A program made the translations under genes and the position numbers. Below the pieces are notes generated by a model, which saw nothing but the letters and a program-made list of their open reading frames with translations, had not been told where the DNA came from and searched no databases. This document shows positions 14,046-64,000 of a stretch of DNA of 64,000 nucleotides, one piece after another. Numbering within the stretch: the first letter of the stretch is position 1; every line of letters starts with the position of its first letter. Source of the stretch: Octopus sinensis (taxonomy: Eukaryota); assembly GCF_006345805.1 (NCBI RefSeq), contig NC_043025.1, positions 16,616,001 to 16,680,000 of the forward strand. The letters run 5' to 3'.

Positions 14046-14335
14046 CTTTACTGCCCACAAGGAGCTAAATACAGAGAGGACAAACAAGGACAGACAAAGG
14101 GATTAAGTCAATTACATCGACCACAGAGCGAAACTGGTACTTTATTTATCAACCCCGAAAGGATGAAAGGCAAAGTTGACCTAGTTCAAATTCCGCTGAG
14201 GTCAACTTTGCCTTTCATCCTTTCAGAGTCGATAAATTAAGTACCAGTTACGCACTGGGGTCGATGTAATCGACTTAATCCCTTTGTCTGTCCTTGTTTG
14301 TCCTCTCTGTGCTTAGCCCCTTGTGGGCAGTAAAG
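14046..14335. mobile_element. Head-to-head pair of family-B SINE 3' halves forming a ~137-bp-arm hairpin with a 16-nt loop
   Basis: Left arm ctttactgcccacaagg...ggcaaagttgacct (to 14182), loop agttcaaattccgctg, right arm aggtcaactttgcc...ccttgtgggcagtaaag (14199-14335). Confidence 0.92.
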
Positions 14336-14679
14336 AGTGAGGCCATGCTGGGACGCCACCTTAGAGGCATGTCAAACAAATCACGCACCCCTACCTATTT
14401 TTTAAAGCTTGGTACCTATTCTTTCAGTCTCTTATACCAAACCATTAAGTTAGAGGAACACAAACAAACCAACATCGCTAGTCAGTGGTAGATAAACACT
14501 AGCACAAAGACAATTGCATGCGTGCATGATGTGCTTCTTTCAGTTTCAAGGCTTTTGCCAGCCCGGGTCCACAGTAGAAAACATGCGCAAAATGCCATGC
14601 AGTGATATTGAACCAGGAACCACATGGCTAAGAAGTACACTTCTTACACAAAGCAAACGTCTATACGTATTATATATAT

Positions 14680-14912
14680 TTCTTTACTACCCACAAGGGG
14701 CTAAACACAGAGGGGGACAAACAAGGACAGACAAACGGATTAAGTCGATTATATATCGACCCCAGTGCATAACTGGTACCTAATTTATCGACCCTGAAAG
14801 GATGAAAGGCAAAGTTGACCTTGGCGGAATTTGAACCCAGAACGTAACGACAGACGAAATACGGCTACGCATTTCACCCGGCATGCTAACGTTTCTGCCA
14901 GCTCGCCGCCTA
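14680..14912 (-). mobile_element. tRNA-SINE family B, full length
   Basis: Ends ...ttctgccagctcgccgcc, the reverse of the ggcggcgagctggcagaa head; the core is intact. Confidence 0.92.
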
Positions 14913-16625: not shown

Positions 16626-16681
16626 AAATATAAAAAGAATCCTGCTGTATTTTTATAATGAAATATTATTGGGAATTGAAA

Positions 16682-16880
16682 GCAGCGGGCTTGCAGAAAC
16701 GTTAGCGAAATGCTTAGCGGTATTTCGTCTGTCTTTATGTTCTGAGTTCAAATTCTGCGAAGGTTGACTTTGCCTTTCAGCCTTTGGGGGGAGGGGGTGA
16801 CTAATTAAGTAACAGTTGCGTACTGGGGTCGATCTAATCGGCTGGCCCCCTCCCCCAAAATTTCGAGCCTGTGCCTAGAA
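16682..16880 (+). mobile_element. tRNA-SINE family B variant
   Basis: gcgggcttgcagaaacgttagc...ttctgagttcaaattctg...gactttgcctttcagcctttgggg...gtactggggtcgatctaat. Confidence 0.85.
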
Positions 16881-38650: not shown

Positions 38651-38789
38651 ACATTGAAGAGGACAAGGGCTCTGTTGTCTGCAAAAGTCTTGTCTGAAAG
38701 CATTGTGGTCCTGGAATTGGTCGAGCAATAAACGAAGTGCCTTGTGGTGTTTAGTAACATCTCTAAACTACAACTTCGCCTTTCAGCCT

Positions 38790-41700
38790 TTTGATGAGAA
38801 GTTTTTGATGAAATAAAGTAGCAGTGAAATACTGGGGTAGATTTAATATTCCTCTAAAACATCTGAGATGCCAAGGGAATTATGATAGAAGACTAACACT
38901 AACTTTACCTTTCTTTGTTGTGGGGTGGATACAATAAAGTAGCAGTGAAATACTGGGGTAGATTTAATATTCCTCTAAAACATCTGAGATGCCAGGGAAT
39001 TATAATAGAAGACTAACACTAACTTTACCTTTCTTGTTGTGGGGTGGATAAAATAAAGTAGCAGTGAAATACTGGGGTAGATTTAATATTCCTCTAAAAC
39101 ATCTGAGATGCCAAGGGAATTATGATAGAAGACTAACACTAACTTTACCTTTCATTTTTGTTGTGGGGTGGATAAAATAAAGTAGCAGTGAAATACTGGG
39201 GAAGATTTAATATTTCTATAAATATCTGAGATGCCAAGGGAATTATAATAGAAGACTAACACTAACTTTACCTTTCATTGTTGTGGGGTGGATAAAAAAA
39301 GTAGCAGTGAAATACTGGGGAAGATTTAATATTTCTATAATATCTGAGATGCCAAGGGAATTATAATAGAAGACTAACACTAACTTTACCTTTCATTGTT
39401 GTGGGGTGGATAAAATAAAGTAGCAGTGAAATACTGGGGTAGATTTAATATTCCTCTAAAACATCTCAGATGCCAAGGGAATTATAATAGAAGACTAACA
39501 CTAACTTTACCTTTCTTTGTTGTGGGGTGGATAAAATAAAGTAGCAGTGAAATACTGGGGAAGATTTAATATTCTATAAACATCTGAGATGCCAAGGGAA
39601 TTATGATAGAAGACGAACACTAACTTTACCTTTCATTGTTGTGGGGTGGATAAAATAAAGTAGCAGTGAAATACTGGGGAAGATTTAATATTTCTATAAA
39701 TATCTGAGATGCCAAGGGAATTATAATAGAAGACTAACACTAACTTTACCTTTCATTGTTGTGGGGTGGATAAAATAAAGTAGCAGTGAAATGCTGGGGT
39801 AGATTTAATATTCCTCTAAAACATCTGAGATGCCAAGGGAATTATAATAGAAGACTAACACTAACTTTACCTTTCATTGTTGTGGGGTGGATAAAATAAA
39901 GTAGCAGTGAAATACTGGGGTAGATTTAATATTCCTCTAAAACATCTGAGATGCCAAGGGAATTATGATAGAAGACTAACACTAACTTTACCTTTCATTG
40001 TTGTGGGGTGGATAAAATAAAGTAGCAGTGAAATACTGGGGTAGATTTAATATTTCTATAAAACATCTGAGATGCCAAGGAAATTATAATAGAAGACTAA
40101 CACTAACTTTACCTTTCTTTGTTGTGGGGTGGATAAAATAAAGTAGCAGTGAAATACTGGGGTAGATTTAATATTCCTCTAAAACATCTGAGATGCCAAG
40201 GGAATTATGATAGAAGACTAACACTAACTTTACCTTTCATTGTTGTGGGGTGGATAAAATAAAGTAGCAGTGAAATACTGGGGAAGATTTAATATTCTAT
40301 AAATATCTGAGATGCCAAGGGAATTATGATAGAAGACTAACACTAACTTACCTTTCATTGTTGTGGGGTGGATAAAATAAAGTAGCAGTGAAATACTGGG
40401 GTAGATTTAATATTCCTCTAAAACATCTGAGATGCCAAGGGAATTATAATAGAAGACTAACACTAACTTTACCTTCTTTGTTGTGGGGTGGAAAAAATAA
40501 AGTAGTCAGTGAAATACTGGGGTAGATTTAATATTCCTCTAAAACATCTGAGATGCCAAGGGAATTATGATAGAAGACTAACACTAACTTTACCTTTCAT
40601 TGTTGTGGGGTGGATAAAATAAAGTAGCAGTGAAATACTGGGGAAGATTTAATATTTCTATAAAACATCTGAGATGCCAAGGGAATAATAATAGAAGACT
40701 AACACTAACTTTACCTTTCATTGTTGTGGGGTGGATAAAATAAAGTAGCAGTGAAATACTGGGGTAGATTTAATATTTCTATAAAACATCTGAGATGCCA
40801 AGGGAATTATAATAGAAGACTAACACTAACTTTACCTTTCTTTGTTGTGGGGTGGATAAAATAAAGTAGCAGTGAAATACTGGGGTAGATTTAATATTCC
40901 TCTAAAACATCTGAGATGCCAAGGGAATTATGATAGAAGACTAACACTAACTTTACCTTTCTTTGTTGTGGGGTGGATAAAATAAAGTAGCAGTGAAATA
41001 CTGGGGAAGATTTAATATTTCTCTAAAACAGCTGATATGCAAAGGGAATTATGATAGAAGACTAACACTAACTTTACCTTTCTTTGTTGTGGGGTGGATA
41101 AAATAAAGTAGCAGTGAAAGACTGGGGAAGATTTAATATTTCTAAAATATCTGAGATGCCAAGGGAATTATAATAGAAGACTAACACTAACTTTACCTTT
41201 CATTGTTGTGGGGTGGATAAAATAAAGTAGCAGTGAAATACTGGGGTAGATTTAATATTCCTCTAAAACATCTGAGATGCCAAGGGAATTATAATAGAAG
41301 ACTAACACTAACTTTACCTTTCTTTGTTGTGGGGTGGATAAAATAAAGTAGCAGTGAAATACTGGCGTAGATTTAATATTCCTCTAAAACATCTGAGATG
41401 CCAAGGGAATTATGATAGAAGACTAACACTAACTTTACCTTTCATTGTTGTGGGGTGGATAAAATAAAGTAGCAGTGAAATACTGGGGTAGATTTAATAT
41501 TTCTATAAAACATCTGAGATGCCAAGGGAATTATAATAGAAGACTAACACTAACTTTACCTTTCTTTGTTGTGGGGTGGATAAAATAAAGTAGCAGTGAA
41601 ATACTGGGGTAGATTTAATATTCCTCTAAAACATCTGAGATGCCAAGGGAATTATGATAGAAGACTAACACTAACTATACCTTTCATTGTTGTGGGGTGG

Positions 41701-44700
41701 ATAAAATAAAGTAGCAGTGAAATACTGGGGAGATTTAATATTTCTATAAATATCTGAGATGCCAAGGGAATAATAATAGAAGACTAACACTAACTTTACC
41801 TTTCTTTGTTGTGGGGTGGATAAATAAAGTAGCAGTGAAATACTGGGGAAGATTTAATATTTCTATAAAATATCTGAGATGCCAAGGGAATTATGATAGA
41901 AGACTAACACTAACTTTACCTTTCTTTGTTGTGGGGTGGATAAAATAAAGTAGCAGTGAAATACTGGGGTAGATTTAATATTCCTCTAAAACAGCTGATA
42001 TGCAAAGGGAATTATGATAGAAGACTAACACTAACTTTACCTTTCTTTGTTGTGGGGTGGATAAAATAAAGTAGCAGTGAAATACTGGGGAAGATTTAAT
42101 ATTTCTATAAAACAGCTGATATGCAAAGGGAATTATGATAGAAGACTAACACTAACTTTACCTTTCTTTGTTGTGGGGTGGATAAAATAAAGTAGCAGTG
42201 AAATACTGGGGAAGATTTAATATTTCTATAAATATCTGAGATGCCAAGGGAATTATGATAGAAGACTAACACACTTTACCTTTCTTTGTTGGGGGTGGAT
42301 AAAATAAAGTAGCAGTGAAATACTGGGGTAGATTTAATATTTCTATAAAACATCTGAGATGCCAAGGGAATTATGATAGAAGACTAACACTAACTTTACC
42401 TTTTTTGTTGTGGGGTGGATAAAATAAAGTAGCAGTGAAATACTGGGGAAGATTTAATATTTCTCTAAAACAGCTGATATGCAAAGGGAATTATGATAGA
42501 AGACTAACACTAACTTTACCTTTCTTTGTTGTGGGGTGGATAAAATAAAATAGCAGTGAAATACTGGGGAAGATTTAATATTTCTATAAATATCTGAGAT
42601 GCCAAGGAATTATAATAGAAGACTAACACTAACTTTACCTTTCATTGTTGTGGGGTGGATAAAATAAAGTAGCAGTGAAATACTGGGGTAGATTTAATAT
42701 TCCTCTAAAACATCTGAGATGCCAAGGGAATTATAATAGAAGACTAACACTAACTTTACCTTTCTTTGTTGTGGGGTGGATAAAATAAAGTAGCAGTGAA
42801 ATACTGGGGTAGATTTAATATTCCTCTAAAACATCTGAGATGCCAAGGGAATTATGATAAAAGACTAACACTAACTTTACCTTTCATTGTGTGGGGTGGA
42901 TAAAATAAAGTAGCAGTGAAATACTGGGGTAGATTTAATATTTCTATAAAACATCTGAGATGCCAAGGGAATTATAATAGAAGACTAACACTAACTTTAC
43001 CTTTCTTTGTTGTGGGGTGGATAAAATAAAGTAGCAGTGAAATACTGGGGTAGATTTAATATTCCTCTAAAACATCTGAGATGCCAAGGGAATTATGATA
43101 GAAGACTAACACTAACTTTACCTTTCTTTGTTGTGGGGTGGATACAATAAAGTAGCAGTGAAATACTGGGGTAGATTTAATATTCCTCTAAAACATCTGA
43201 GATGCCAAGGGAATTATAATAGAAGACTAACACTAACTTTACCTTTCTTTGTTGTGGGGTGGATAAAATAAAGTAGCAGTGAAATACTGGGGTAGATTTA
43301 ATATTCCTCTAAAACATCTGAGATGCCAAGGGAATTATGATAGAAGACTAACACTAACTTTACCTTTCATTGTTGTGGGGTGGATAAAATAAAGTAGCAG
43401 TGAAATACTGGGGAAGATTTAATATTTCTATAAATATCTGAGATGCCAAGGGAATTATGATAGAAGACTAACACTAACTTTACCTTTCATTGTTGTGGGG
43501 TGGATAAAATAAAGTAGCAGTGAAATACTGGGGTAGATTTAATATTCCTCTAAAACATCTGAGATGCCAAGGGAATTATAATAGAAGACTAACACTAACT
43601 TTACCTTTCTTTGTTGTGGGGTGGAAAAAATAAAGTAGCCAGTGAAATACTGGGGTAGATTTAATATTCCTCTAAAACATCTGAGATGCCAAGGGAATTA
43701 TAATAGAAGACTAACACTAACTTTACCTTTCTTTGTTGTGGAGTGGAAAAAATAAAGTAGCCAGTGAAAAACTGGGGTAGATTTAATATTCCTCTAAAAC
43801 ATCTGAGATGCCAAGGGAATTATATAGAAGACTAACACTAACTTTACCTTTCATTGTTGTGGGGTGGATAAAATAAAGTAGCAGTGAAATACTGGGGTAG
43901 ATTTAATATTTCTATAAAACATCTGAGATGCCAAGGGAATTATGATAGAAGACTAACACTAACTTTACCTTTCTTTGTTGTGGGGTGGATAAAATAAAGT
44001 AGCAGTGAAATACTGGGGAAGATTTAATATTTCTCTAAAACAGCTGATATGCAAAGGGAATTATGATAGAAGACTAACACTAACTTTACCTTTCTTTGTT
44101 GTGGGGTGGATAAAATAAAGTAGCAGTGAAATACTGGGGAAGATTTAATATTTCTATAAATATCTGAGATGCCAAGGGAATTATAATAGAAGACTAACAC
44201 TAACTTTACCTTTCTTTGTTGTGGGGTGGATAAAATAAAGTAGCAGTGAAATACTGGGGTAGATTTAATATTCCTCTAAAACATCTGAGATGCCAAGGGA
44301 ATTATGATAAAAGACTAACACTAACTTTACCTTTCATTGTTGTGGGGTGGATACAATAAAGTAGCAGTGAAATACTGGGGTAGATTTAATATTTCTATAA
44401 AACATCTGAGATGCCAAGGGAATTATAATAGAAGACTAACACTAACTTTACCTTTCTTTGTTGTGGGGTGGATAAAATAAAGTAGCAGTGAAATACTGGG
44501 GTAGATTTAATATTCCTCTAAAACATCTGAGATGCCAAGGGAATTATGATAGAAGACTAACACTAACTTTACCTTTCTTTGTTGTGGGGTGGATACAATA
44601 AAGTAGCAGTGAAATACTGGGGTAGATTTAATATTCCTCTAAAACATCTGAGATGCCAAGGGAATTATAATAGAAGACTAACACTAACTTTACCTTTCTT

Positions 44701-47700
44701 TGTTGTGGGGTGGATAAAATAAAGTAGCAGTGAAATACTGGGGTAGATTTAATATTCCTCTAAAACATCTGAGATGCCAAGGGAATTATGATAGAAGACT
44801 AACACTAACTTTACCTTTCATTGTTGTGGGGTGGATAAAATAAAGTAGCAGTGAAATACTGGGGAAGATTTAATATTTCTATAAATATCTGAGATGCCAA
44901 GGGAATTATGATAGAAGACTAACACTAACTTTACCTTTCATTGTTGTGGGGTGGATAAAATAAAGTAGCAGTGAAATACTGGGGTAGATTTAATATTCCT
45001 CTAAAACATCTGAGATGCCAAGGGAATTATAATAGAAGACTAACACTAACTTTACCTTTCTTTGTTGTGGGGTGGAAAAAATAAAGTAGCCAGTGAAAAA
45101 CTGGGGTAGATTTAATATTCCTCTAAAACATCTGAGATGCCGAGGGAATTATAATAGAAGACTAACACTAACTTTACCTTTCTTTGTTGTGGGGTGGAAA
45201 AAATAAAGTAGCCAGTGAAAAACTGGGGTAGATTTAATATTCCTCTAAAACATCTGAGATGCCAAGGGAATTATAATAGAAGACTAACACTAACTTTACC
45301 TTTCATTGTTGTGGGGTGGATAAAATAAAGTAGCAGTGAAATACTGGGGTAGATTTAATATTCCTCTAAAACATCTGAGATGCCAAGGGAATTATGATAG
45401 AAGACTAACACTAACTTTACCTTTCATTGTTGTGGGGTGGATAAAATAAAGTAGCAGTGAAATACTGGGGTAGATTTAATATTTCTATAAAACATCTGAG
45501 ATGCCAAGGGAATTATAATAGAAGACTAACACTAACTTTACCTTTTTTGTTGTGGGGTGGATAAATAAATAAAGTAGCAGTGAAATACTGGGGTAGATTT
45601 AATATTCCTCTAAAACATCTGAGATGCCAAGGGAATTATGATAAAAGAGTAACACTAACTTTACCTTTCTTTGTGGGGTGGATACAATAAAGTAGCAGTG
45701 AAATACTGGGGTAGATTTAATATTCTCTAAAACAACTGAGATGCCAAGGGAATTATAATAGAAGACTAACACTAACTTTACCTTTCTTTGTTGTGGGGTG
45801 GATAAAATAAAGTAGCAGTGAAATACTGGGGTAGATTTAATATTCCTCTAAAACATCTGAGATGCCAAGGGAATTATGATAGAAGACTAACACTAACTTT
45901 ACCTTTCATTGTTGTGGGGTGGATAAAATAAAGTAGCAGTGAAATACTGGGGTAGATTTAATATTCCTCTAAAACATCTGAGATGCCAAGGGAATTATAA
46001 TAGAAGACTAACACTAACTTTACCTTTCTTTGTTGTGGGGTGGAAAAAATAAAGTAGCCAGTGAAATACTGGGGTAGATTTAATATTCCTCTAAAACATC
46101 TGAGATGCCAAGGGAATTATGATAGAAGACTAACACTAACTTTACCTTTCATTGTTGTGGGGTGGATAAAATAAAGTAGCAGTGAAATACTGGGGAAGAT
46201 TTAATATTTCTATAAATATCTGAGATGCCAAGGGAATAATAATAGAAGACTAACACTAACTTTACCTTTCATTGTTGTGGGGTGGATAAAATAAAGTAGC
46301 AGTGAAATACTGGGGTAGATTTAATATTTCTATAAAACATCTGAGATGCCAAGGGAATTATGATAGAAGACTAACACTAACTTTACCTTTCTTTGTTGTG
46401 GGGTGGATAAAATAAAGTAGCAGTGAAATACTGGGGAAGATTTAATATTCTATAATATCTGAGATGCCAAGGGAATTATAATAGAAGACTAACACTAACT
46501 TTACCTTTCATTGTTGTGGGGTGGATAAAATAAAGTAGCAGTGAAATACTGGGGTAGATTTAATATTCCTCTAAAACATCTGAGATGCAGGGAATTATGA
46601 TAGAAGACTAACACTAACTTTACCTTTCTTTGTTGTGGGGTGGATAAAATAAAGTAGCAGTGAAATACTGGGGTAGATTTAATTCCTCTAAAACATCTGA
46701 GATGCCAAGGGAATTATGATAGAAGACTAACACTAACTTTACTTTCTTTGTTGTGGGGTGGATACAATAAAGTAGCAGTGAAATACTGGGGTAGATTTAA
46801 TATTCCTCTAAAACATCTGATATGCCAAGGAATTATAATAGAAGACTAACACTAACTTTACCTTTCTTTGTTGTGGGGTGGATAAAATAAAGTAGTAGCA
46901 GTGAAATACTGGGGTAGATTTAATATTCCTCTAAAACATCTGAGATGCCAAGGGATTATGATAGAAGACTAACACTAACTTTACCTTTCATTGTTGTGGG
47001 GTGGATAAAATAAAGTAGCAGTGAAATACTGGGGAAGATTTAATATTTCTATAAATATCTGAGATGCCAAGGAATTATGATAGAGACTAACACTAACTTT
47101 ACCTTTCATTGTTGTGGGGGTGATAAATAAAGTAGCAGTGAAATACTGGGGTAGATTTATATTCCTCTAAAACATCTGAGATGCCAAGGAATTATGATAG
47201 AAGACTAACACTAACTTTACCTTTCTTTGTTGTGGGGTGGAAAAAATAAAGTAGCAGTGAAAAACTGGGTAGATAGATTAAATTCCTCTAAAACATCTGA
47301 GATGCCGAAGGGAATTATAATAGAAGACTAACACTAACTTTACCTTTCTTTGTTGTGGGGTGGAAAAAATAAAGTAGCAGTGAAATACTGGGGTAGATTT
47401 AATATTCCTCTAAAACATCTGAGATGCCAAGGAATTATAATAGAAGACTAACACTAACTTTACCTTTCATTGTTGTGGGGTGGATAAAATAAAGTAGCAG
47501 TGAAATACTGGGGTAGATTTAATATTCCTCTAAAACATCTGAGATGCCAAGGGAATTATGATAGAAGACTAACACTAACTTTACCTTTCATGTTGTGGGG
47601 TGGATAAAATAAAGTAGCAGTGAAATACTGGGGTAGATTTAATATTTCTATAAAAAATCTGAGATGCCAAGGGATTATAATAGAAGACTAACACTAACTT

Positions 47701-52330: not shown

Positions 52331-55300
52331 ATACTGGGTTAGATTTAATATTCCTCTAAAACTTCTGAGATGCCAAGGCAATTGAAATAGAAGACTAACA
52401 GTAACTTTACGTTTCATTGTTGTGGGGTGGATAAAAATGTAGCAGTGAAATACTGGGGTAGATTTAATATTCCTCTAAAACTTCTGAGATGCCAAGGCAA
52501 TTGAAATAGAAGACTAACAGTAACTTTACGTTTCATTGTTGTGGGGTGGATAAAAATGTAGCAGTGAAATACTGGGGTAGATTTAATATTCCTATAATGT
52601 ATCTAAGATACCAAGGAAATTATAATAGTAGACTAACAGTAACTTTATCTTTCATTGTTGTGCGGTGGATACAATAAAGTACCAGTAAAATTCTGGGGTA
52701 GATTTAATATTCCTCTAAAACTTCTGAGATGCCAAGGCAATTGTAATAGAAGACTAGCAGTAACTTTAACTTTCATTGTAATTGTAATAGAAGACTAACA
52801 TTAACTTTAACTTTCATTAGCAGTAAAATCCTGGGGTAGATTTAATATTCCTCTATAACTTCTGAGATGACAAGGGAATTATAATAGAAGACTAACACTA
52901 ACTTTACCTTTCATTGTTGTGGGGTGGATACAATAAAGTAGCAGAAAAATTCTGGGGTAGATTTAATATTCCTCTAAAACTTTTGAGATGCCAAGGGAAT
53001 TATAATAGAAGACTAACAGTAACTTTATCTTTCATTGTCGTGGGGTGGATACAATAAAGTAGCAGTAAAATTCTTGGGTAGATTTAATATTCCTGTAAAA
53101 CTTTTGAGATGCCAAGGGAATTGTAATAGAAGACTAACAGTAACTTTATCTTTCATTGTTGTGCGGTGGATACAATAAAGTAGAAGTAAAATTCTGGGGT
53201 AGAGTTAATATTCCTCTGAAACTTCTGAGATGCCAAGGGAATTATAATAGAAGACTAACAGTTACTTTACGTTTCATTGTTGTGGGGGGGATAAATAATG
53301 TAGCAGTGAAATACTGGGGTCGATTTAATATTCCTATAAAGTATCTAAGATACCAAGAAAATTAGAATAGAAGACTAACAATAACTTTATCTTTCATTGG
53401 ATACAATAAAGTAGCAGTAAAATTCTGGGGTAGATTTAATCTTCCACTAAAACTTCTGAGATTCTAATTGAATTGTAATAGAAGACTAACTGTAACTTTA
53501 CCTTTCATTGTTGTGGCTTGGATACAATAAAAAAGCAGTAAAATTCTGGGATAGATTAATATCCCTCTAAAACTTCTGAGATGCCAAGGCAATTGTAATA
53601 GAACACTAACAGTTACTTTACCTTTCATTGTTGTGGGGTGGATAAATAAAGTAGCAGTGAAATACTGGGGTAGATTTAATATTCCCATAAAATTATCTAA
53701 GACACCAAGGAAATTACAATAGAAGACTAACACTAACTTTACGTTTCATTTTTGTGGGGTGGATACAATAAAGTAGCACTAAAATTCAGGGGTAGATTTA
53801 ATATTTCTCTAAAACTTCTGAGATGCCAAGACAATTGTAATAGAAGACTAACAGTAACTTTATATTTCATTGTTGTGCGGTGGATACAATAAAGTAGCAG
53901 TAAAATTCTGGGGTAGATTTAATATAACACTAAACCTTCTGAGATGCCAAGGGAATTATAATACAAGAAAAGAGTAACTTTACCTTTCATTGTTGTGGCT
54001 TGGATACAATAAAAAAGCAGTAAAATTCTGGCATAGATTTAATATCCTCTAAAACTTCTGAGATGCCAAGGCAATTGTAATAGAACACTAACAGTTACTT
54101 TACCTTTCATTGTTGTGGGGTGGATAAATAAAGTAGCAGTGAAATACTGGGGTAGATTTAATATTCCCATAAAATTATCTAAGACACCAAGGAAATTAGA
54201 ATAGAAGACTAACACTAACTTTACCTTTCATGTTTGTTGGGTGGACACAATAAAGTAGCAGTAAAATTCTGGGGTAGATTTAATATAACACTAAACCTTC
54301 TGAGATGCCAAGGCAATTGAAATAGAAGACTAACAGTAACTTTACGTTTCATTGTTGTGGGGTGGATAAAAATGTAGCAGTGAAATACTGGGGTAGATTT
54401 AATATTCCTATAATGTATCTAAGATACCAAGGAAATTATAATAGTAGACTAACAGTAACTTTATCTTTCATTGTTGTGCGGTGGATACAATAAAGTACCA
54501 GTAAAATTCTGGGGTAGATTTAATATTCCTCTAAAACTTCTGAGATGCCAAGGCAATTGTAATAGAAGACTAGCAGTAACTTTAACTTTCATTGTAATTG
54601 TAATAGAAGACTAACATTAACTTTAACTTTCATTAGCAGTAAAATCCTGGGGTAGATTTAATATTCCTCTATAACTTCTGAGATGACAAGGGAATTATAA
54701 TAGAAGACGAACACTAACTTTACCTTTCATTGTTGTGGGGTGGATACAATAAAGTAGCAGAAAAATTCTGGGGTAGATTTAATATTCCTCTAAAACTTTT
54801 GAGATGCCAAGGGAATTATAATAGAAGACTAACAGTAACTTTATCTTTCATTGTCGTGGGGTGGATACAATAAAGTAGCAGTAAAATTCTTGGGTAGATT
54901 TAATATTCCTGTAAAACTTTTGAGATGCCAAGGGATTTGTAATAGAAGACTAACAGTAACTTTATCTTTCATTGTTGTGCGGTGGATACAATAAAGTAGA
55001 AGTAAAATTCTGGGGTAGAGTTAATATTCCTCTGAAACTTCTGAGATGCCAAGGGAATTATAATAGAAGACTAACAGTTACTTTACGTTTCATTGTTGTG
55101 GGGGGGATAAATAATGTAGCAGTGAAATACTGGGGTCGATTTAATATTCCTATAAAGTATCTAAGATACCAAGAAAATTAGAATAGAAGACTAACAATAA
55201 CTTTATCTTTCATTGGATACAATAAAGTAGCAGTAAAATTCTGGGGTAGATTTAATCTTCCACTAAAACTTCTGAGATTCTAATTGAATTGTAATAGAAG

Positions 55301-57087
55301 ACTAACTGTAACTTTACCTTTCATTGTTGTGGCTTGGATACAATAAAAAAGCAGTAAAATTCTGGGATAGATTTAATATCCCTCTAAAACTTCTGAGATG
55401 CCAAGGCAATTGTAATAGAACACTAACAGTTACTTTACCTTTCATTGTTGTGGGGTGGATAAATAAAGTAGCAGTGAAATACTGGGGTAGATTTAATATT
55501 CCCATAAAATTATCTAAGACACCAAGGAAATTACAATAGAAGACTAACACTAACTTTACGTTTCATTTTTGTGGGGTGGATACAATAAAGTAGCACTAAA
55601 ATTCAGGGGTAGATTTAATATTTCTCTAAAACTTCTGAGATGCCAAGACAATTGTAATAGAAGACTAACAGTAACTTTATATTTCATTGTTGTGCGGTGG
55701 ATACAATAAAGTAGCAGTAAAATTCTGGGGTAGATTTAATATAACACTAAACCTTCTGAGATGCCAAGGGAATTATAATACAAGAAAAGAGTAACTTTAC
55801 CTTTCATTGTTGTGGCTTGGATACAATAAAAAAGCAGTAAAATTCTGGCATAGATTTAATATCCCTCTAAAACTTCTGAGATGCCAAGGCAATTGTAATA
55901 GAACACTAACAGTTACTTTACCTTTCATTGTTGTGGGGTGGATAAATAAAGTATCAGTGAAATACTGGGGTAGATTTAATATTCCCATAAAATTATCTAA
56001 GACACCAAGGAAATTAGAATAGAAGACTAACACTAACTTTACCTTTCATGTTTGTTGGGTGGACACAATAAAGTAGCAGTAAAATTCTGGGGTAGATTTA
56101 ATATAACACTAAACCTTCTGAGATGCCAAGGGAATTATAATACAAGAAAAGAGTAACTTTACCTTTCATTGTTGTGGGGTGTATACAATAAATTAGCAGT
56201 AAAATTCTGGGGTAGATTTAATATTTCTCTTAATCTTCTGAGAGGGCAAGGGAATTATAATATAAGACTAACTTTACCTTTCATTGTTGTTGGGTGGATA
56301 CAATAAATTAGCAGTAAAATTCTGGGGTGGATATAATATTCCTCAAAAAATTGTGAGATGCCAAGGGTATTAAAATAGAAGACTAACAGTAACTTTACCT
56401 TTCATTGTTGTGGGGTGGATACAATAATATAGCAGTAACATTCTGGGGTAGATTTAATATTCCCCTAAAACTTCTGAGATGCCAAAGGAATTGTAATAGA
56501 AGACTAACAGTAACTTTATCTTTCATTGTTGTGAGGTGGATACAATAATGTAGCAGTAAAATTCTGGGGTAGATTTAATATTCATCTAAAACTTCTGAGA
56601 TGACAAAGGAATTAAAATAGAAGACTAACACTAACTTTACCTTTCATTGTTGTGGAGTGGATACAATAAATTAGCAGTAATATTTTGGGGTAGATTTAAT
56701 ATTCCTTTAAAACTTCTGAGATGCCAAGGCAATTGTAATAGAAGACTAACAGTAACTTTACGTTTCATTGTTGTGGTGTGGCTAAATAAAGTAGCAGTGA
56801 AATACCGGGGTAAATTTAATATTCCTATAAAGTATCTAAGATACCAAGGAAATTATAATAGAAGACTAACAGTAACTTTATCTTTCATTGTTGTGCGGTG
56901 GATACAATAAAATAGCATTAAAATTCTGAGATAGATTTAATATTCATGTAAAACTTCTGAGATGCCAAGTCAATTGTAATAGAAGGCTAACATTGACTTT
57001 AACTTTCATTGTTATTGTAATGGAAGACTAACATTAACTTTAACCTTCATTAGCAGTAAAATCCTGGGGTAGATTTAATATTCCTCT

Positions 57088-57502
57088 TGTAACAGGATGG
57101 GTTATCGATTCACTGAAAGGGTGTCGATCCGATCCAGTCACATACAATTTTTGCAAGACAATACAGACGAAGTCAGGTTGTAGGTGAAAGACAGCAGTTC
57201 GTTTATTTATTGCGATGGCGTACGTGTGTCTGCTGGGAGAAGGACAGCCTCTGATGTAGAGCTTCGTGCTCGTTTTGTTGAAGAGGTTCGATGGTCGTTG
57301 GCGGCTAAGTCGGTGAGTTTATCAGAGCCTGCGAAATGTACGTCCGATCGCGTTGGCTGACTTGCCAGAGAGAAGGATTTGAGTTTGTCGGGCCCAAGGG
57401 AACGTTTCCTGCACATGCGCATGGGGAAGACTTCCAATGGCAACCCGGAAGTAGTCCTATTCTGCGCATGCGCGCCGAACCCTACACAGAAGCATCACTA
57501 CA
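57088..57502 (-). mobile_element. Solo LTR (415 bp), copy 1
   Basis: TGTAAC...ACTACA termini, 4-bp TSD CTCT (57084-57087 / 57503-57506), AATAAA on the minus strand (~57203-57212), CpG-rich against the satellite. Confidence 0.88.
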
Positions 57503-58248
57503 CTCTAAAACTTCTGAGATAACAAGGTAAATATAATAGAAGACAAACACTAACTTTACCTTTCATTGTTGTGGGGTGGATACAATAATATAGCAGTAAC
57601 ATTCTGGGGTAGATTTAATATTCCCCTAAAACTTCTGAGATGCCAAAGGAATTGTAATAGAAGACTAACAGTAACTTTATCTTTCATTGTTGTGAGGTGG
57701 ATACAATAATGTAGCAGTAAAATTCTGGGGTAGATTTAATATTCATCTAAAACTTCTGAGATGACAAAGGAATTAAAATAGAAGACTAACACTAACTTTA
57801 CCTTTCATTGTTGTGGAGTGGATACAATAAATTAGCAGTAATATTTTGGGGTAGATTTAATATTCCTTTAAAACTTCTGAGATGCCAAGGCAATTGTAAT
57901 AGAAGACTAACAGTAACTTTACGTTTCATTGTTGTGGTGTGGCTAAATAAAGTAGCAGTGAAATACCGGGGTAAATTTAATATTCCTATAAAGTATCTAA
58001 GATACCAAGGAAATTATAATAGAAGACTAACAGTAACTTTATCTTTCATTGTTGTGCGGTGGATACAATAAAATAGCATTAAAATTCTGAGATAGATTTA
58101 ATATTCATGTAAAACTTCTGAGATGCCAAGTCAATTGTAATAGAAGGCTAACATTGACTTTAACTTTCATTGTTATTGTAATGGAAGACTAACATTAACT
58201 TTAACCTTCATTAGCAGTAAAATCCTGGGGTAGATTTAATATTCCTCT

Positions 58249-58663
58249 TGTAACAGGATGGGTTATCGATTCACTGAAAGGGTGTCGATCCGATCCAGTC
58301 ACATACAATTTTTGCAAGACAATACAGACGAAGTCAGGTTGTAGGTGAAAGACAGCAGTTCGTTTATTTATTGCGATGGCGTACGTGTGTCTGCTGGGAG
58401 AAGGACAGCCTCTGATGTAGAGCTTCGTGCTCGTTTTGTTGAAGAGGTTCGATGGTCGTTGGCGGCTAAGTCGGTGAGTTTATCAGAGCCTGCGAAATGT
58501 ACGTCCGATCGCGTTGGCTGACTTGCCAGAGAGAAGGATTTGAGTTTGTCGGGCCCAAGGGAACGTTTCCTGCACATGCGCATGGGGAAGACTTCCAATG
58601 GCAACCCGGAAGTAGTCCTATTCTGCGCATGCGCGCCGAACCCTACACAGAAGCATCACTACA
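58249..58663 (-). mobile_element. Solo LTR (415 bp), copy 2, apparently identical
   Basis: Same termini, the same CTCT TSD on both sides and the same satellite flanks, offset exactly 1161 bp. Confidence 0.88.
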
Positions 58664-61600
58664 CTCTAAAACTTCTGAGATAACAAGGTAAATATAATAG
58701 AAGACAAACACTAACTTTACCTTTCATTGTTGTGGGGTGGATACAATAAAGAAGCAGTAAAATTCTGGGGTAGATTTAATATTCCTCTAAAACATCTGAG
58801 AAGCCAAGGCAATAGTAATTGAATACTAACAGTAATTTTACCTTTCATTGTTGTGCGGTGGATACAATAAAGTAGCACTAAAATTCTGGGAAGGATTTAA
58901 TATTCACCCAAAACTTCTGAGATGCCAAGGGAATTATAATAGAAGACTAACAGTAACTTTACCTTTCATTGCTGTGCGATGGATAAAATAAAGTAGCAGT
59001 AAAATTCTGGGGTAGATTTAATATTCCTGTAAAACTTCTGAGATGACAAAGGAATTGTAATAAAAGACTAACATTAACTTTACCTTTCATTGTTGTTGGG
59101 TGTATAGAATAAATTAGCAGTAAAATTCTGGTGCAAATTTAATATTTCTCTAAAACTTCTGAGATGGCAAGGGAATTATAATATAAGACTAACACTAACT
59201 TTACATTTCATTGTTGTGGGGTGGATACAATAAAGTAGCAGTAAAATTCTGGGGTAGATTTAATATTCCTGTAAAACTTCTGAGATTCCAAGGCAATTGT
59301 AATAGAAGACTAACATTAACTTTACCTTTAATTGTTGTTGGCTGGATACAATAATTTAGCAGTAAAATTCTGAGGTAGATTTAATATTCCTCTAAAACTT
59401 CTGAGATGACAAGGGAATTGTAATAGAAGAGTAACAGTAACTTTACCTTTCATTGTTGTGGGGTGGATACAATAAAGTAGCAGTAAAATTCTGGGGTAGA
59501 ATTAATATTCCTCAAAAACTTCTGAGATTCCAAGGCAATTGTAATAGAAAACTAACATTAACTTTACCTTTCATTGTTGTTGGGTGTATACAATAAATTA
59601 GCAGTGAAATACTAGGGTAGATTTAATATTCCTATAAAACTTCTGAGATGCCAAGGAATTGTAATAGAAGACGAACAGTGACTTTACCTTTCATTGTTGT
59701 GGGGTGGATACAATAAAATAGCAGTAAAATTCTGGGGTTGATTTAATATTCCTCTAAAACTTCTGAGATAAGAAGGTAATTATAATAGAAGTCTAACACT
59801 AACTTTACCTTTCATTGTTGTGGGGTGAATACAATAAAATAGCAGTAAAATTCTGGGGTAGATTTAATATTCCTGTAAAACTTCTGAGATTCCAAGTAAT
59901 AGAAGACTAACACTAACTTTACCTCTCATTGTTGTTGGGTGTATACAATAAAGTAGCAGTAAAATTCTGGGGTAGATTTAATATTTCTCTAAAACTTCTG
60001 AGATGGGAAGGGAATTATAATATAAGGCTAACACTAAATATACCTTTCATTGTTGTGGGGTGGATACAATAAATTAGCAGTAAAATACTGGGGTAGATTT
60101 AATATTCCTACTTTACGTTTCATTGTTGTGGGGTGGATACAATAAAGTAGCAGTAAAATTCAGGGGTAGATTTAATATTCCTCTCAAACTTCTGAGTGGC
60201 CAAGGCAATTGTATTTGAAGACTAACAGAAACATTATCTTTTATTGTTGTGTAGTGGATACAATAAAGTAGCAGTAAAATTCTGGGAAAGATTTAATATT
60301 ACTACAAAACTTCTGAGATGCCAAGGGAATTATAATAGACTAACAGTAACTTTACCTTTCATTGTTGTTGGGTGTATACAATAAGTTAGCAGTAAAATTC
60401 TGAGGTAGATTTAATATTTCTCTAAACTTCTGAGATGGCAAGGGAATTATAATATAAGACTAACACTAAATTTACCTTTCATTGTTGTAGGGTGGATAAA
60501 ATAAATTAGCAGCAAAATTCTGGGGTAGATTTAATATTCCTTTAAACTTCTGAGATGAGAAGGGAATTATAATATAAGACTAACAGTAACTTTATCTTTC
60601 ATTGTTGTGCGGTGGATATAATAAAGTAGCAGCAAAAAATTCTGGGGTAGATTTAATATTCCTCTAAAACTTCTGAGAAGAAAAAGGAATTGTAATAGTA
60701 GACGAACAATGAATTTACCTTTCATTGTTGTGGGGTGGATACAATAAAATAGCAGGAAAATTTTGGGTAGATTTAATATTCCTCTAAAACTTCTGAGATG
60801 CCAAGGGAATGGTAATAGAAGAATAACAGTAACTTTACCTTTCATTTTTGTGGGCATTGTTGTGCGGTGGATACAATAAATTAGCAGTAAAATTCTGGGG
60901 TAGGTTTAATACTCCTGTGAAACTTCTTAGATTCCAAGGCAATTGTAATAGACGACTAACATTAACTTTACCTTTAATTGTTGTTGGGTGGATACAATAA
61001 TTTAGCAGTAAAATTCTGGGGTAGATTTAATATTCCTCTAAAACTACTGAGATTCGAAGGGAATTATAATAGAAGACTAACAGTAACTTTACCTTTCATT
61101 GTTGTGGGGTGGATACATTAAAGTAGCAGTAAAATTCTGGGGTAGATTTAATATTCCTCTAAAACTTCTGAGATGCCAAGGCAATTGTAATTGAAGACTA
61201 ACACTAACTTTATCTTTCATTGTTGTGCGCTGGATACAATACAGTAGCAGTAAAATTCTGGGAAAGATTTAATATTCCTCTAAAACTTCTGAGATTCCAA
61301 GGCAATTGTAATAGAAGACTAACATTAACTTTACCTTTCATTGTTGTGCGGTGGATACAATAAATTAGCAGGAAAATTCTGGGTAGATTTAATATTTCCC
61401 TAAAACTTCTAAGATGGCAAGGGAATTATAATATAAGACTAACAGTAACTTTAGCTTTCATTGCTGTGCGGTGGATACGATAAATTAGCAGTGAAATACT
61501 GGGGTAGATTTAATATTCCTGTAGAACTTCTGAGATGACAAAGGAATTGTAATAGAAGAGTAACAGTAAATTTACCTTTCATTTTTGTGGATATTGTTGT

Positions 61601-62222
61601 TGGGTGGATACAATAAATTAGCAGCAAATTTCTGGCTTAGATTTAATATACCTGTAAAACTTCTGAGATGCCAAGGGAATTATAATAGAAGACTAACAGT
61701 AACTTTACCTTTCATTGTTGTGGGGTGGATACAATAAAGTAGCAGTAAAATTCTGGGGTAGATTTAATATTTGTCTAAAACTTCTGAGATGAGAAGGGAA
61801 TTATAATATAAGACTAACAGTACCTTTACCTTTCATTGTTGTGTGGTGGATATAATAAATTAGTAGTGAAATACTGGGGTAGATTTAATATTCCTATAAA
61901 GTATCCAAGATACCAAGGAAATTATAATAGAAAACTAACAGTAACTTTATCTTTCATTGTTGTGCGGTGGATACAATAAAGTAGCAGCAAAAAATTCGGG
62001 GTATATTTACTATTCCTCTAAAACTTCTGAGATGACAAAGGAATTGTAATAGAAGATGAACAATGAATTTACCTTTCATTGTTGTGGGGTGGATACAATA
62101 AAATTGCAGTAAAATTCTGGGGTACATTTAATATTCCTGTAGAACTTCTGAGATGCCAAGGCAATTTTATTAGAAGACTAACAGTAACTTTCAATTTCAT
62201 TAGCAGTAAAAGGCAAATGTAA

Positions 62223-64000
62223 TAGTCTTCTATTTCAATTCCCTCATCATCTCAGAAGTTTTAGAGGAATATTAAATCTACCACAGAATTTTACTGCTAC
62301 TTTATTGTATGCACCCAACAACAATTAAAGGTAAAATTAATGTTTGTCTTCTATTACAATTCCTTTGGCATCTCAGAAGTTTTAGGGGAATATTAAATCT
62401 ACCCCAGAATTTTACTGCTAATTTATTGTATCCACCGCACAACAATGCCCACAACAGTGAAAGGTAAAGTTACTGTTAGTCTTCTATTACAGTTCCCTTG
62501 GTATCTCAAAAGTTTTAGAGGAATATTAAATCTACCCCAGAATTTTACTGCTAATTTATTGTATCCACCCCACAATAATGAAAGTTAAAGTTAATGTTAG
62601 TCTTCTATTACGATTACAATGAAAGGTAAAGTTAATGTTAGTCTTCTATTACAATTGCATTGGAATCTCAGAAGCTTTACAGGAATATCAAATCAACCCC
62701 AGAACTTTAATGCTAATTTATTGTATCCACCCAACAACAATGAAAGGTAAGGTTAATGTCAGTCTTCTATTACAATTACAATGAAAGTTAAAGTTACTGT
62801 TACTCTTCTATTACAATTGACTTGGAATCTCAGAAGTTTTAGAGGAATATTAAATCTTTCCCAGAATTTTACTGCTATTTTATTGTATCCACCGCAAAAC
62901 AAGGCCCACAACAATGAAAGGTAAAGTTACTGTTAGTCTTCTATTACGATTGCCTTGGCAACTCAGAAGTTTTCGAGGAATATCAAATCTACCCCAGAAT
63001 TTGACTCCTACTTTATTGTATCCACCCAACAAAAATGAGAGTTAAAATTAGTGTTAGTCTTCTATTATAATTCCCTTTGCATCTCAGAAGTTTTATAGGA
63101 ATATTAAATCTACCACAGAATTTTAATGCTATTTTATTGTATCCACCCCACAACAATGAAAGGTAAAGTTACTGTTAGTCTTCTATTACAATTCCCTTGT
63201 CATCTTAGAAGTTTTAGAGGAATATTAAATCTACCCCAGAATTTTACTGCCAAAGTTAATTTTAGTTTTCTATTACAATGGCCTTGGCTTCTCAGAAGTT
63301 TTACAGGATTATTAAATCTACCCCAGAATTTTACTGCTACTTTATTGGATCCACCCAACAAAAATGAAAGTTAAAATTAGTTTTAGTCTTCTATTATAAT
63401 TCCCTTGGAATCTCAGAAGTTTTAGAGGAATATTAAATCAATCCCAGAATTTTACTGCTACTTTATTGCATCGACCCAACAATAATGAAAGTGAAATTTA
63501 ATGTTAGATTTCTATTATAATTTCCTTGTCATCTCATAAGTTTAGAGGAATATTATATCTTCCTCCAGAATTTTGCTGCTACTTTATTGTATCCACTGCA
63601 TAACAATGAAAGGTAAAGTTCGTGTTAATCCTATATTATAATTCCCATGCCATCTCAGAAGTTTTAGAGAAATATTAAATCTACCCTAGAATTTTACTGC
63701 TAATTTATCATATACACCGAACAACAATGAAAAGTAATGTTAATGTTAGTCTTCTATTATAATTCCCTTGTCATCTCAGAAGTTTAGAGGAATATTAAAT
63801 CTACCCCAGGATTTTACTGCTAATAAAAGTTATAATTAATGTTTGTTTTCTATTACAATTGCCTTGGAATCTCAGATATTTTATAGGAATATTAAATCTA
63901 CCCCAGAATTTTACTGCTACTTTATTGTATCCACCCCACAACAATGAAAGCTAACGTTACTGTTAGTCTTCTTTTACAATTCCCTTGTCATCTCAGAAGT
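62223..64000 (-). repeat. Satellite DNA, inverted-orientation domain (runs off the window)
   Basis: Monomers read as the reverse complement (ctcagaagttttagaggaatattaaatctaccccagaattttactgctac...) after a ~12-nt junction at 62211-62222. Confidence 0.96.

What the first reader, a model, noticed from the sequence alone, without database searches (positions are those of the whole stretch)
38700..64000. A >25-kb satellite whose 121-bp monomer appears to derive from the central domain of the window's family-B tRNA-SINE
Seen in sequence: the SINE core actttgcctttcatcctttcggggtcgataaa-ttaagtaccagttacgcactggggtcgatgtaat (e.g. 4140-4205, 14205-14270, 34808-34872) aligns to the monomer segment actttacctttcattgttgtggggtggataaaataaagtagcagtgaaatactggggtagatttaat at 52/67 positions with one gap (hand count). 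The rest of the monomer (ttctgagat(t/g)ccaagg) resembles the SINE B-box region (ttctgagttcaaattccgccgagg). Some diverged monomers keep SINE states (aaagtaCcag at 52676, ggggtCgat at 53316). The left junction, caacttcgcctttcagcctttt (38771-38792), is closer to the SINE than to the satellite, as if the seed copy is still there. Inference: a dispersed Pol III retroposon domain was amplified into a satellite about 200 monomers long in this window, possibly (peri)centromeric or subtelomeric. TE-derived satellites are known in general; I do not know of a description for this octopus family.
Basis: partly seen in the sequence, partly recalled or inferred. Interest (0 to 1): 0.82.

Follow-up and report, generated by a model that had tools for sequence, protein, structure and literature searches.

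The report
Satellite DNA partly derived from a SINE
A tandem repeat array of more than 25 kb is built from a 121-bp unit, and 67 bp of that unit are clearly homologous to the central part of a short retroposon (SINE) scattered through the neighbouring DNA; this makes it a good, probably first molluscan, example of a kind of satellite origin so far documented convincingly only in lizards and snakes.

Summary
The array is real. It runs from 38,772 to the window end (25.2 kb) and holds 190 full and about 13 partial 121-bp monomers. It has a homogeneous left domain (92-95% pairwise identity), an older right domain (84-86%), a strand flip at about 62.2 kb, and two identical 414-bp LTR-like inserts.

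The SINE is real: 13 dispersed copies in two subfamilies that share a core.

A profile of the satellite core finds the cores of all 12 copies that retain one.

- The B-box resemblance of the other 54 bp is not significant.
- 'SINE states' in diverged monomers are at chance level (10 of 123 departures).
- The source is not family B. Older A-like copies share 3-6 satellite states at the 15 diagnostic sites, against 1-2 for B copies.

Three results favour SINE-to-satellite as the direction:
- All four CpGs of the SINE core are lost in a CpG-free monomer.
- The satellite shares subfamily-specific SINE states.
- The junction unit's first 20 nt match the SINE at 17/20 (maximum 15/20 among 190 monomers).

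Unresolved: the origin of the 54-bp remainder, the species, the chromosomal position and the distribution. No head lies at the junction. This is a new member of a known kind (squamate sSats, 2023).

The parts
38772..38793 (+). SINE-like 5' end of the first repeat unit (CAACTTCGCCTTTCAGCCTTTT); the array starts abruptly here.
   Evidence: It is 19/22 identical to the SINE consensus and 14-15/22 to the satellite. Positions 1-20 match the SINE at 17/20, while no one of 190 monomers exceeds 15/20. The next 41 nt are 40/41 identical to the satellite and 32/41 to the SINE. A local 13-bp duplication (TTTTGATGAGAAG / TTTTTGATGAAAT) follows.
38772..52600 (+). Left, homogeneous domain of the 121-bp satellite (variant L: ..GGATAAAAT..CAGTGAAATACTGGGG..CATCTGAG..ACACTA).
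   Evidence: 114 full monomers. Mean pairwise identity is 0.953 (38.7-47 kb) and 0.923 (47-52.6 kb); p-distance to own consensus is 0.025-0.038. Recurrent multi-monomer variant blocks, no strict higher-order repeat.
52600..62200 (+). Right, older domain of the satellite (variant R: ..GGATACAAT..CAGTAAAATTCTGGGG..CTTCTGAG..ACAGTA), with 41-bp internal duplications and deletion variants.
   Evidence: Pairwise identity is 0.86 and p-distance to own consensus is 0.076. TRF reports 41-bp duplications at 52,739, 54,555, 56,973 and 58,134.
62221..64000 (-). Inverted block of R-type monomers, running off the window end.
   Evidence: From 62,221 on, nhmmer hits are on the minus strand. GC skew changes sign. 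The breakpoint sequence is shown.
57089..57502 (+). 414-bp GC-rich insert with TGT...ACA ends and a 4-bp CTCT duplication of the monomer target site; read as a solo-LTR-like insertion.
   Evidence: Sequence and flanks are shown. blastn finds only this copy and its duplicate in the window.
58250..58663 (+). Second, identical copy of the LTR-like insert, carried by a 1161-bp segmental duplication (56,393-57,553 = 57,554-58,714).
   Evidence: 414/414 and 1161/1161 identical. The duplication is either very recent or an assembly artefact.
52655..56286 (+). About 1.8-kb (15-monomer) segmental duplication within the R domain (52,655-54,470 and 54,471-56,286).
   Evidence: 1781 of 1821 aligned columns identical. 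Identity peaks at 0.94 at lag 13.
16679..16888 (+). Complete subfamily-A SINE with a 17-bp target-site duplication (AATATTATTGGGAATTG). From core start to 3' end it measures 122 bp.
   Evidence: It is the only SINE copy whose tail gives a significant pairwise match to the monomer remainder (z = 4.7-5, family-wise p = 0.003-0.008).
3348..3534 (-). Old A-like SINE copy. It shares the most satellite states of any copy, 6 of the 15 diagnostic sites.
631..1117 (-). Two old A-like SINE copies (631-816 and 920-1117).
4060..4299 (+).
   Evidence: JC distance to the B consensus is 0.078.
6840..7032 (-). Family-B SINE copy.
7904..8086 (+). Old SINE copy with the GAAT state at core positions 47-50, as in the satellite.
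9998..10114 (+). 5'-truncated SINE copy; the best single match to the satellite-core profile (E = 3.8e-9, 53/67).
14038..14342 (.). Two 5'-truncated family-B copies lying head to head (14,038-14,192 minus strand; 14,180-14,342 plus strand).
14669..14910 (-). Full-length family-B SINE copy.
34725..34960 (+).

Best explanation
The array is a satellite DNA. Positions 1-67 of its 121-bp monomer descend from the central (core) segment of the SINE family that litters the flanking DNA, most likely from an older A-like subfamily and not from the young family B.

Proposed history; every step in it is inferred:
1. A head-less (5'-truncated) SINE copy, or a fragment of one, together with about 54 bp of adjoining sequence, was duplicated in tandem. 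Those 54 bp may be that subfamily's own tail plus its terminal simple repeat.
2. The unit was amplified by unequal exchange.
3. The array then grew and was homogenised in blocks.

Shown directly: two sequence domains of different age, multi-monomer segmental duplications, an LTR-like insertion that was itself duplicated, and an inversion.

The monomer has lost the Pol III boxes and every CpG, so it does not behave as a retroposon. It behaves as ordinary, probably heterochromatic, tandem DNA. The first unit at the left edge escaped homogenisation over its first ~22 nt and still shows SINE states.
For: Homology:
- 52/67 identity, z = 18, 0/2000 shuffles.
- In both directions, profiles find the partner: the satellite-core profile finds all 12 SINE cores, and the SINE profile hits 203 array units at a median of 27 bits.

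The SINE is a real dispersed retroposon:
- 13 copies on both strands, two subfamilies with different tails, 5'-truncated copies, and a 17-bp target-site duplication.
- Copy ages range from JC 0.04 to 0.39.

Direction:
- The SINE core consensus has 4 CpGs. All four are lost in the monomer, whose consensus has none; CpG observed/expected is 0.10 in the array against 0.54 in the flank.
- The satellite shares subfamily-specific states (A at 35, GAAT at 47-50) with older A-like copies: 3-6 of 15 sites against 1-2 for B copies, p = 0.001. It therefore sits inside SINE diversity.
- The edge unit matches the SINE at 17/20, while the maximum among 190 monomers is 15/20; its next 41 nt are 40/41 satellite.

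Growth mode:
- Two domains at 0.95 and 0.86 identity.
- Segmental duplications of 1161 bp (100% identical) and about 1.8 kb (97.8%), and a duplicated LTR-like insert.

Not a retroposon: no A or B box in the monomer.

Possible tail origin:
- The head-less A-type SINE measures 122 bp against a 121-bp monomer, with a collinear alignment of 81 identities.
- The remainder matches the 16,678 tail at z = 4.7-5.

Precedent: squamate sSats have the same design, including extra sequence of unknown origin and SINE-like terminal units.
Against: - 54 of 121 bp are not demonstrably SINE-derived. A remainder-only profile finds nothing in the 38.7 kb outside the array. A profile of the four A-type tails gives the remainder no score. 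The single pairwise match leans partly on an AATAG simple repeat.
- No SINE head is detectable upstream of the junction (family-wise p = 0.2-0.46).
- Scored over the whole window, the junction unit (32 bits) is not more SINE-like overall than ordinary left-domain monomers (mean about 31, maximum 38).
- Only one of the four CpG losses is a simple CpG-to-TpG transition.
- No outgroup was available to polarise the sites where all SINE copies differ from the satellite.
- The more SINE-like left domain is the younger one, so SINE-likeness does not simply increase with monomer age.
- One array, one window and 13 SINE copies are all the data.
Confidence: 0.72

Rival explanations
1. Both the satellite and these SINEs took the 67-bp segment independently from a third element not sampled in the window. 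That element could be another SINE family sharing the same conserved central domain, or a partner LINE. Its own downstream sequence would then be the unexplained 54 bp.
For: - The 54-bp remainder matches no SINE head or tail of the window at family level.
- According to the literature, central domains are shared among different SINE families, and octopus OR1/OR2 are listed as CORE-SINEs.
- Satellite-to-SINE core divergence is high (JC about 0.25).
Against: - The satellite shares subfamily-specific states with the A-like copies of this very family.
- The edge unit carries the TTTCAGCCTTT string seen in the A-type copy at 16,678.
- The head-less A-type element is collinear with the monomer and of equal length.
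Confidence: 0.17
2. Reverse direction: the satellite came first, and a SINE captured one monomer fragment as its body.
For: - No outgroup polarises the roughly ten sites at which all SINE copies differ from the satellite.
- The right-hand monomers look old (p-distance 0.08-0.09).
- The origin of SINE bodies is generally unknown, as stated.
Against: - Four CpGs would have had to arise in the SINE core from a CpG-free monomer.
- The core is shared by subfamilies with different tails, and by copies as old as JC 0.2-0.39.
- Satellite states are shared with only a subset of SINE copies.
- The array edge is SINE-like, not the reverse.
Confidence: 0.06
3. The array edge is not a remnant of the founding copy. 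It is a recombination joint: an already formed satellite array, born elsewhere, was joined to a resident 5'-truncated SINE fragment through their shared core homology.
For: - There is a sharp switch from SINE states to satellite states inside one unit (19/22 to the SINE, then 40/41 to the satellite).
- The adjoining monomers are the youngest and most homogeneous of the array.
- No SINE head lies upstream.
Against: A resident SINE reduced to about 22 nt, ending exactly at the start of the core, would be needed. Homogenisation that stops short of the array end explains the same pattern. This rival concerns only the junction and not the SINE ancestry of the monomer. Its confidence is therefore separate from the others: it is compatible with the main explanation and does not add to the other figures.
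Confidence: 0.2
4. The similarity is due to chance or shared AT-rich composition, or the array is an assembly artefact.
For: The 1161-bp duplicate is 100% identical, and the inversion lies near the window end. Either could be an assembly error.
Against: - z = 18 against dinucleotide-preserving shuffles, and reciprocal profile hits at E down to 4e-9.
- The 190 monomers carry graded divergence and domain structure, which no assembler invents.
Confidence: 0.01

Closest known systems
SINE-derived satellites (sSats) of squamate reptiles, from Squam1/2/3 SINEs (Vassetzky, Kosushkin & Ryskov 2023, Mob DNA 14:21; PMC10702118)
   Same: - Tandem arrays whose unit is a portion of a SINE that is also dispersed in the same genome.
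- Units of 67-150 nt, some including 14-30 nt 'of unknown origin'.
- Terminal units that keep SINE sequence.
- Homogeneity of 82-94%, rising with array length.
- Locus-specific monomer subvariants.
   Different: - The host is a presumed cephalopod, not a reptile, and the SINE family is unrelated.
- The non-SINE part is much larger (54 of 121 bp).
- The unit is far more diverged from the SINE (78% identity).
- The terminal unit does not extend to a SINE terminus.
- Only one locus is seen. The array (more than 200 units, more than 25 kb, open-ended) is at the upper end of what that paper reports.
Amphibian Pol III/tRNA-related tandem repeats (newt PolIII/TAN, Xenopus OAX/satellite I, Rana/polIII, Hy/polIII)
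   Same: Tandem repeats proposed to be related to tRNA-derived retroposons.
   Different: Those units contain the tRNA-like, transcribable part, and no matching dispersed SINE is known; the 2023 paper judges them inconclusive. Here the dispersed SINE is present alongside the array, and the unit lacks the promoter part.
TE-derived satellites of bivalve molluscs (MITE- and Helitron-associated tandem repeats; own knowledge and the review PMC12692304)
   Same: Mollusc satellites that arise by tandem repetition of part of a mobile element.
   Different: Those come from DNA transposons and usually stay as short arrays inside the element. This one is related to a retroposon and forms a long free-standing array.
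CORE-SINE superfamily, including octopus OR1/OR2 (Ohshima & Okada 1994, as cited in PMC4824008 and PMC4758252)
   Same: A tRNA-like head with a B-box-like motif, a conserved central segment of about 65 bp, variable tails and target-site duplications. From memory, the core resembles the MIR core around GGGGATAATAATAGTACC.
   Different: Membership is not shown.

Membership tests
SINE-derived satellite (sSat, in the sense of Vassetzky et al. 2023) | Head-to-tail tandem array of at least four internal units | tested here: met
   190 full-length monomers, with a modal spacing of 121 bp.
SINE-derived satellite (sSat, in the sense of Vassetzky et al. 2023) | The unit is significantly similar to part of a SINE that is dispersed in the same genome | tested here: met
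   52/67 identity, z = 18, 0/2000 shuffles; reciprocal profile hits; 13 dispersed SINE copies.
SINE-derived satellite (sSat, in the sense of Vassetzky et al. 2023) | A terminal unit extends into SINE sequence up to the SINE terminus | tested here: inconclusive
   The left edge unit is uniquely SINE-like over about 22 nt (17/20 against at most 15/20). No SINE head lies upstream. The right end of the array is outside the window.
SINE-derived satellite (sSat, in the sense of Vassetzky et al. 2023) | The whole unit is accounted for by SINE sequence, allowing small additions | tested here: not met
   54 of 121 bp have no family-level match to any SINE part. There is only a weak match to one A-type tail.
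Satellite DNA (classical) | Long array with concerted evolution of units | tested here: met
   More than 25 kb. Within-domain identity is 0.95 and 0.86, against 0.84-0.86 between domains. Block duplications are present.
Satellite DNA (classical) | Heterochromatic (pericentromeric or subtelomeric) location, and many copies genome-wide | not testable with these tools
   No cephalopod genome is available here. Scans of the metagenome and viral collections returned nothing.
Centromeric satellite | Association with centromeric histone, or position at the primary constriction | not testable with these tools
   Needs CENP-A profiling or FISH.
tRNA-derived SINE (the parent element) | Head recognisable as a tRNA, with A and B boxes | tested here: inconclusive
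   ARAGORN finds no tRNA. Rfam gives no tRNA hit at E <= 1. A B-box-like GAGTTCAAATTCC is present in the copies that have a head.
tRNA-derived SINE (the parent element) | Dispersed copies with target-site duplications and 5' truncations | tested here: met
   A 17-bp duplication flanks 16,679-16,888. Three copies are 5'-truncated.
CORE-SINE superfamily (the parent element) | Central domain homologous to the CORE sequence of about 65 bp | tested here: inconclusive
   Against a MIR consensus recalled from memory: z = 3.1, p about 0.005 with permissive scoring, not significant with strict scoring.

The most novel reading that the evidence does not exclude
This 121-bp repeat is a major (peri)centromeric or subtelomeric satellite of octopod chromosomes. 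Its SINE-derived half would descend from an ancient conserved SINE central domain (CORE-like), which would tie a deeply conserved retroposon module to chromosome architecture in cephalopods, whose centromeres are uncharacterised.
Probability: 0.07. Interest if true: 0.75.

Novelty: new member of a known kind. Interest (0 to 1): 0.45.

Why it matters
Convincing SINE-to-satellite cases are few. The 2023 squamate study judged the earlier amphibian claims inconclusive and left open whether the phenomenon exists outside squamates.

Here the parent SINE and a long array lie side by side, so a well-supported case in a mollusc would show the route is general. It would also give repeat annotators of cephalopod genomes a concrete satellite family to track. 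SINEs make up about 11.6% of the O. vulgaris genome, and neither octopus genome paper read mentions a satellite.

The array also records its own growth: two age domains, block duplications, and a dated insertion. That makes it useful for studying how arrays expand.

It does not open a new kind of biology.

Tried and rejected
2. A-type tail origin tested at family level: a remainder-only profile against the flank, and a profile of the four A-type tails, with and without the 16,678 copy. Neither gives any signal. Only the pairwise match to 16,678 survives.
3. A SINE head upstream of the junction: not significant. The upstream sequence is not a decayed satellite remainder either (p = 0.2).
4. 'SINE states retained in diverged monomers': at chance level.
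5. A 3-mer (362-bp) higher-order repeat: not supported.
7. A tRNA in the SINE head: ARAGORN and Rfam are negative. All Rfam hits are low-complexity miRNA matches below the gathering score.
8. Reaching other assemblies. A satellite pseudo-ORF used as a protein probe found nothing. Exact-pattern scans of metagenome contigs (two) and viral contigs (one) found nothing.
9. Relatives found through the Spinster-like exon. The nearer relative gives only 1.7-kb contigs (81% DNA identity). A more distant relative's 20.5 kb contains neither the SINE nor the satellite.
10. Species identification through accession numbers in the literature: nothing.
11. Literal sequence strings of the SINE and the satellite in the paper library: nothing.

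Full report
**1. What is in the sequence**

Tandem Repeats Finder reports a 121-bp repeat from 38,807 to 57,013 (150.9 copies, 90% matches), with further 121-bp blocks to the end of the window.

With the monomer as query, nhmmer finds 203 units between 38,774 and 63,956. Of these, 190 are full length. Start-to-start spacing is 121 bp in 94 cases and 117-123 bp in most of the others.

The array starts abruptly at 38,772, after an AG-rich low-complexity tract, and runs off the window end.

The array is not uniform:
- **Left domain (38.8-52.6 kb).** Monomers average 92-95% pairwise identity and 2.5-3.8% divergence from their own consensus.
- **Right domain (52.6-64 kb).** Monomers average 84-86% identity and 7.6-8.8% divergence. 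They carry a distinct consensus: GGATACAAT, CAGTAAAATTCTGGGG, CTTCTGAG, ACAGTA.
- **Inverted end.** From 62,221 on the monomers are inverted.

TRF's 362-bp period is not a real higher-order repeat, because identity is flat over lags 1-18. Variant haplotypes do recur in irregular multi-monomer blocks.

Two larger duplications are visible:
- About 1.8 kb (52,655-54,470 and 54,471-56,286), 97.8% identical.
- 1161 bp (56,393-57,553 and 57,554-58,714), 100% identical.

The 1161-bp duplication carries a 414-bp GC-rich insert that begins TGT and ends ACA. The insert is flanked by a duplicated CTCT from the monomer and occurs nowhere else in the window. I read it as a solo-LTR-like insertion that was later copied along with its neighbouring monomers. 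Perfect identity could also mean an assembly error.

**2. The SINE**

Thirteen copies of one SINE family lie in the 38.7 kb left of the array, on both strands. All share two parts: a head with a B-box-like GAGTTCAAATTCC, and a core of about 67 bp.

There are two tail types:
- **Family B.** The tail ends ...CCCTTGTGGGCAGTAAAGAAATA. There are six copies, at JC 0.04-0.08 from their consensus.
- **A-like group.** The tail is CCCCTCCCCCAAAATTTC..CCTGTGCCTA. These copies are mostly older, at JC 0.14-0.39 measured against the B consensus.

The copy at 16,679-16,888 is complete and flanked by a 17-bp target-site duplication. Three copies are 5'-truncated.

ARAGORN finds no tRNA, and Rfam gives no tRNA match at E <= 1. 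'tRNA-derived' therefore rests on the box-like motif and on the literature.

**3. The homology claim**

The Smith-Waterman score is 57, against 15.8 +/- 2.3 for 2000 dinucleotide shuffles (maximum 30), giving z = 18.

A profile built from the satellite's positions 1-67 finds the cores of all 12 SINE copies that retain one outside the array, at E = 4e-9 to 1e-2; the copy at 2,344-2,460 has lost most of its core. A profile built from the SINE copies hits 203 array units at a median of 27 bits. Chance is excluded.

**4. What does not hold**

- **B-box origin of the other 54 bp.** The remainder is ATTCCTCTAAAACATCTGAGATGCCAAGGGAATTATAATAGAAGACTAACACTA.
- **A-type tail origin.** The remainder matches one SINE tail significantly, that of the A-type copy at 16,678 (z = 4.7-5, family-wise p = 0.003-0.008). 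That element measures 122 bp from core start to 3' end, against a 121-bp monomer, and aligns collinearly with it. Against this, a remainder-only profile finds nothing in the flank, and a profile of the four A-type tails gives the remainder no score. The idea that the monomer is a head-less A-type SINE is attractive but unproven.
- **SINE states in diverged monomers.** The quoted variants at 52,676 and 53,316 exist. Over all monomers, though, departures at the 15 diagnostic sites go to the SINE state 10 times and elsewhere 113 times, which is no better than chance.
- **A seed copy with a head.** Nothing upstream of the junction resembles a SINE head.

**5. Which SINE, and which direction**

*Source subfamily.* At the 15 sites where the satellite differs from the B consensus, the six B copies carry the satellite state at 1-2 sites. 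The A-like and older copies carry it at 3-6 sites. These are consistently the same sites: A at position 35 and GAAT at positions 47-50 (exact Mann-Whitney p = 0.001). The satellite therefore groups with the older A-like lineage, not with family B.

*Direction.* Three results favour SINE-to-satellite:
- **CpG loss.** The SINE core consensus has four CpGs, and the monomer has lost all of them. Its consensus is CpG-free. The array's CpG observed/expected ratio is 0.10, against 0.54 in the flank. Losing CpGs is far more likely than gaining four.
- **Nesting.** The satellite shares states with only a subset of SINE copies, so it sits inside SINE diversity.
- **The edge unit.** Its first 22 nt are 19/22 identical to the SINE and 14-15/22 to the satellite. 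Over positions 1-20 it matches the SINE at 17/20, while no one of 190 monomers exceeds 15/20. Its next 41 nt are 40/41 identical to the satellite.

This chimeric edge unit fits incomplete homogenisation at the array end. It also fits a recombination joint with a SINE fragment.

*Caveats.*
- No outgroup was available.
- Only one of the four CpG changes is a simple transition.
- The more SINE-like left domain is the younger one.

**6. Mechanism**

*Inferred.* A head-less SINE fragment plus adjoining sequence was duplicated in tandem and then amplified by unequal exchange.

*Shown.* Later growth proceeded by block duplication, with homogenisation in domains, an insertion and an inversion.

The monomer has no A or B box, so it is not a Pol III unit. 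It most likely behaves as ordinary tandem, probably heterochromatic, DNA.

*Rough timing.* Using the rate calibration quoted for O. vulgaris (JC 0.065 about 18 My, 0.2 about 56 My), and only if the species and rate are comparable:
- Core-to-satellite distance (JC about 0.25) suggests an origin tens of millions of years ago.
- The left domain would have been homogenised within roughly the last 10 My.

These dates are inference only.

**7. Comparison with what is known**

The closest described class is the SINE-derived satellites of squamates (PMC10702118). These have units of 67-150 nt taken from parts of Squam SINEs, sometimes with extra sequence of unknown origin. They also have SINE-like terminal units, and homogeneity that rises with array length.

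The authors regard the older amphibian cases as inconclusive, and do not know whether the phenomenon exists outside squamates.

No paper in the searchable library describes an octopus or cephalopod satellite, or prints these sequences. The two SINE-superfamily papers list octopus OR1/OR2 as CORE-SINEs. I could not test whether this SINE is one of them.

**8. Limits**

I could not confirm the species. The N-terminal exon of a Spinster-like gene in the window has its best relative at 82% amino-acid identity, in Logan assemblies of unnamed runs. The orthologous DNA there is 81% identical.

A more distant relative's 20.5-kb locus contains neither the SINE nor the satellite.

No cephalopod genome collection was available. 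Distribution, copy number, chromosomal position and the orthologous site therefore remain untested.

**9. Verdict**

The core observation is real and statistically solid. The array is a new member of a known kind and of moderate interest.

Noticed in passing
window 57,089-57,502 and 58,250-58,663: A 414-bp GC-rich insert inside the satellite, with TGT...ACA ends and a CTCT target duplication. It looks like a solo LTR. It lies within a 1161-bp block that is duplicated at 100% identity, which means either a very recent duplication or an assembly error.
   Followed up: partly
window 8,544-9,161 (-) and 18,634-19,155 (-): Exons of a Spinster-like major-facilitator transporter gene. By eye, the motifs are ...SPIFGYIGDRYNRKYIM... 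and ...LLNYMDRYTIAG. Pfam MFS_1 gives E = 8.6e-6, below the curated cut-off. The apparent first exon is about 20 kb from the array, so the satellite abuts gene-bearing DNA.
   Followed up: partly
window 25,498-27,095 (-): A reverse-transcriptase fragment in two overlapping frames: Pfam RVT_1 at E = 3.5e-14 and 1.6e-4, with a weak PHD-finger hit. It is a decayed retrotransposon and a possible partner-LINE candidate for the SINEs. That was not tested.
   Followed up: partly
window 14,038-14,342: Two 5'-truncated family-B SINE copies lie head to head and overlap by about 13 bp, forming a palindrome of about 150 bp per arm. Rfam's weak miRNA-like hits at 14,158-14,223 are this hairpin.
   Followed up: no
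window 34,370-34,741 (-): A fragment resembling a pogo/Tc5-type transposase DNA-binding domain (Pfam HTH_Tnp_Tc5, E = 0.004, below the cut-off), next to the SINE at 34,725.
   Followed up: no
window 37,860-38,640: A long AG-rich low-complexity tract lies immediately before the array, with GC skew +0.43 over 38-40 kb. Whether it helped to seed or to bound the array is unknown.
   Followed up: no
window 57,040, 58,200 and 62,190: A recurrent deletion variant of the monomer (TTTCATTAGCAGTAAAA, lacking about 24 nt of the core) sits at both LTR-insert borders and at the inversion breakpoint. It may mark breakage-prone units.
   Followed up: no
window 6,026-6,457; 4,635-5,166; 24,711-25,105: Other tandem repeats in the flank, unrelated to the satellite: a 26/52-bp minisatellite, a 530-bp (ATT)n tract, and 62-bp and 98-bp repeats.
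   Followed up: no
L001 (ENA ERZ21867824, contig ctg117590l, 20.5 kb): A locus from a more distant relative, whose Spinster-like N-terminal exon is 40% identical. It contains no copy of this SINE family, against 13 copies in 38.7 kb here. This suggests the SINE has a restricted taxonomic range.
   Followed up: partly
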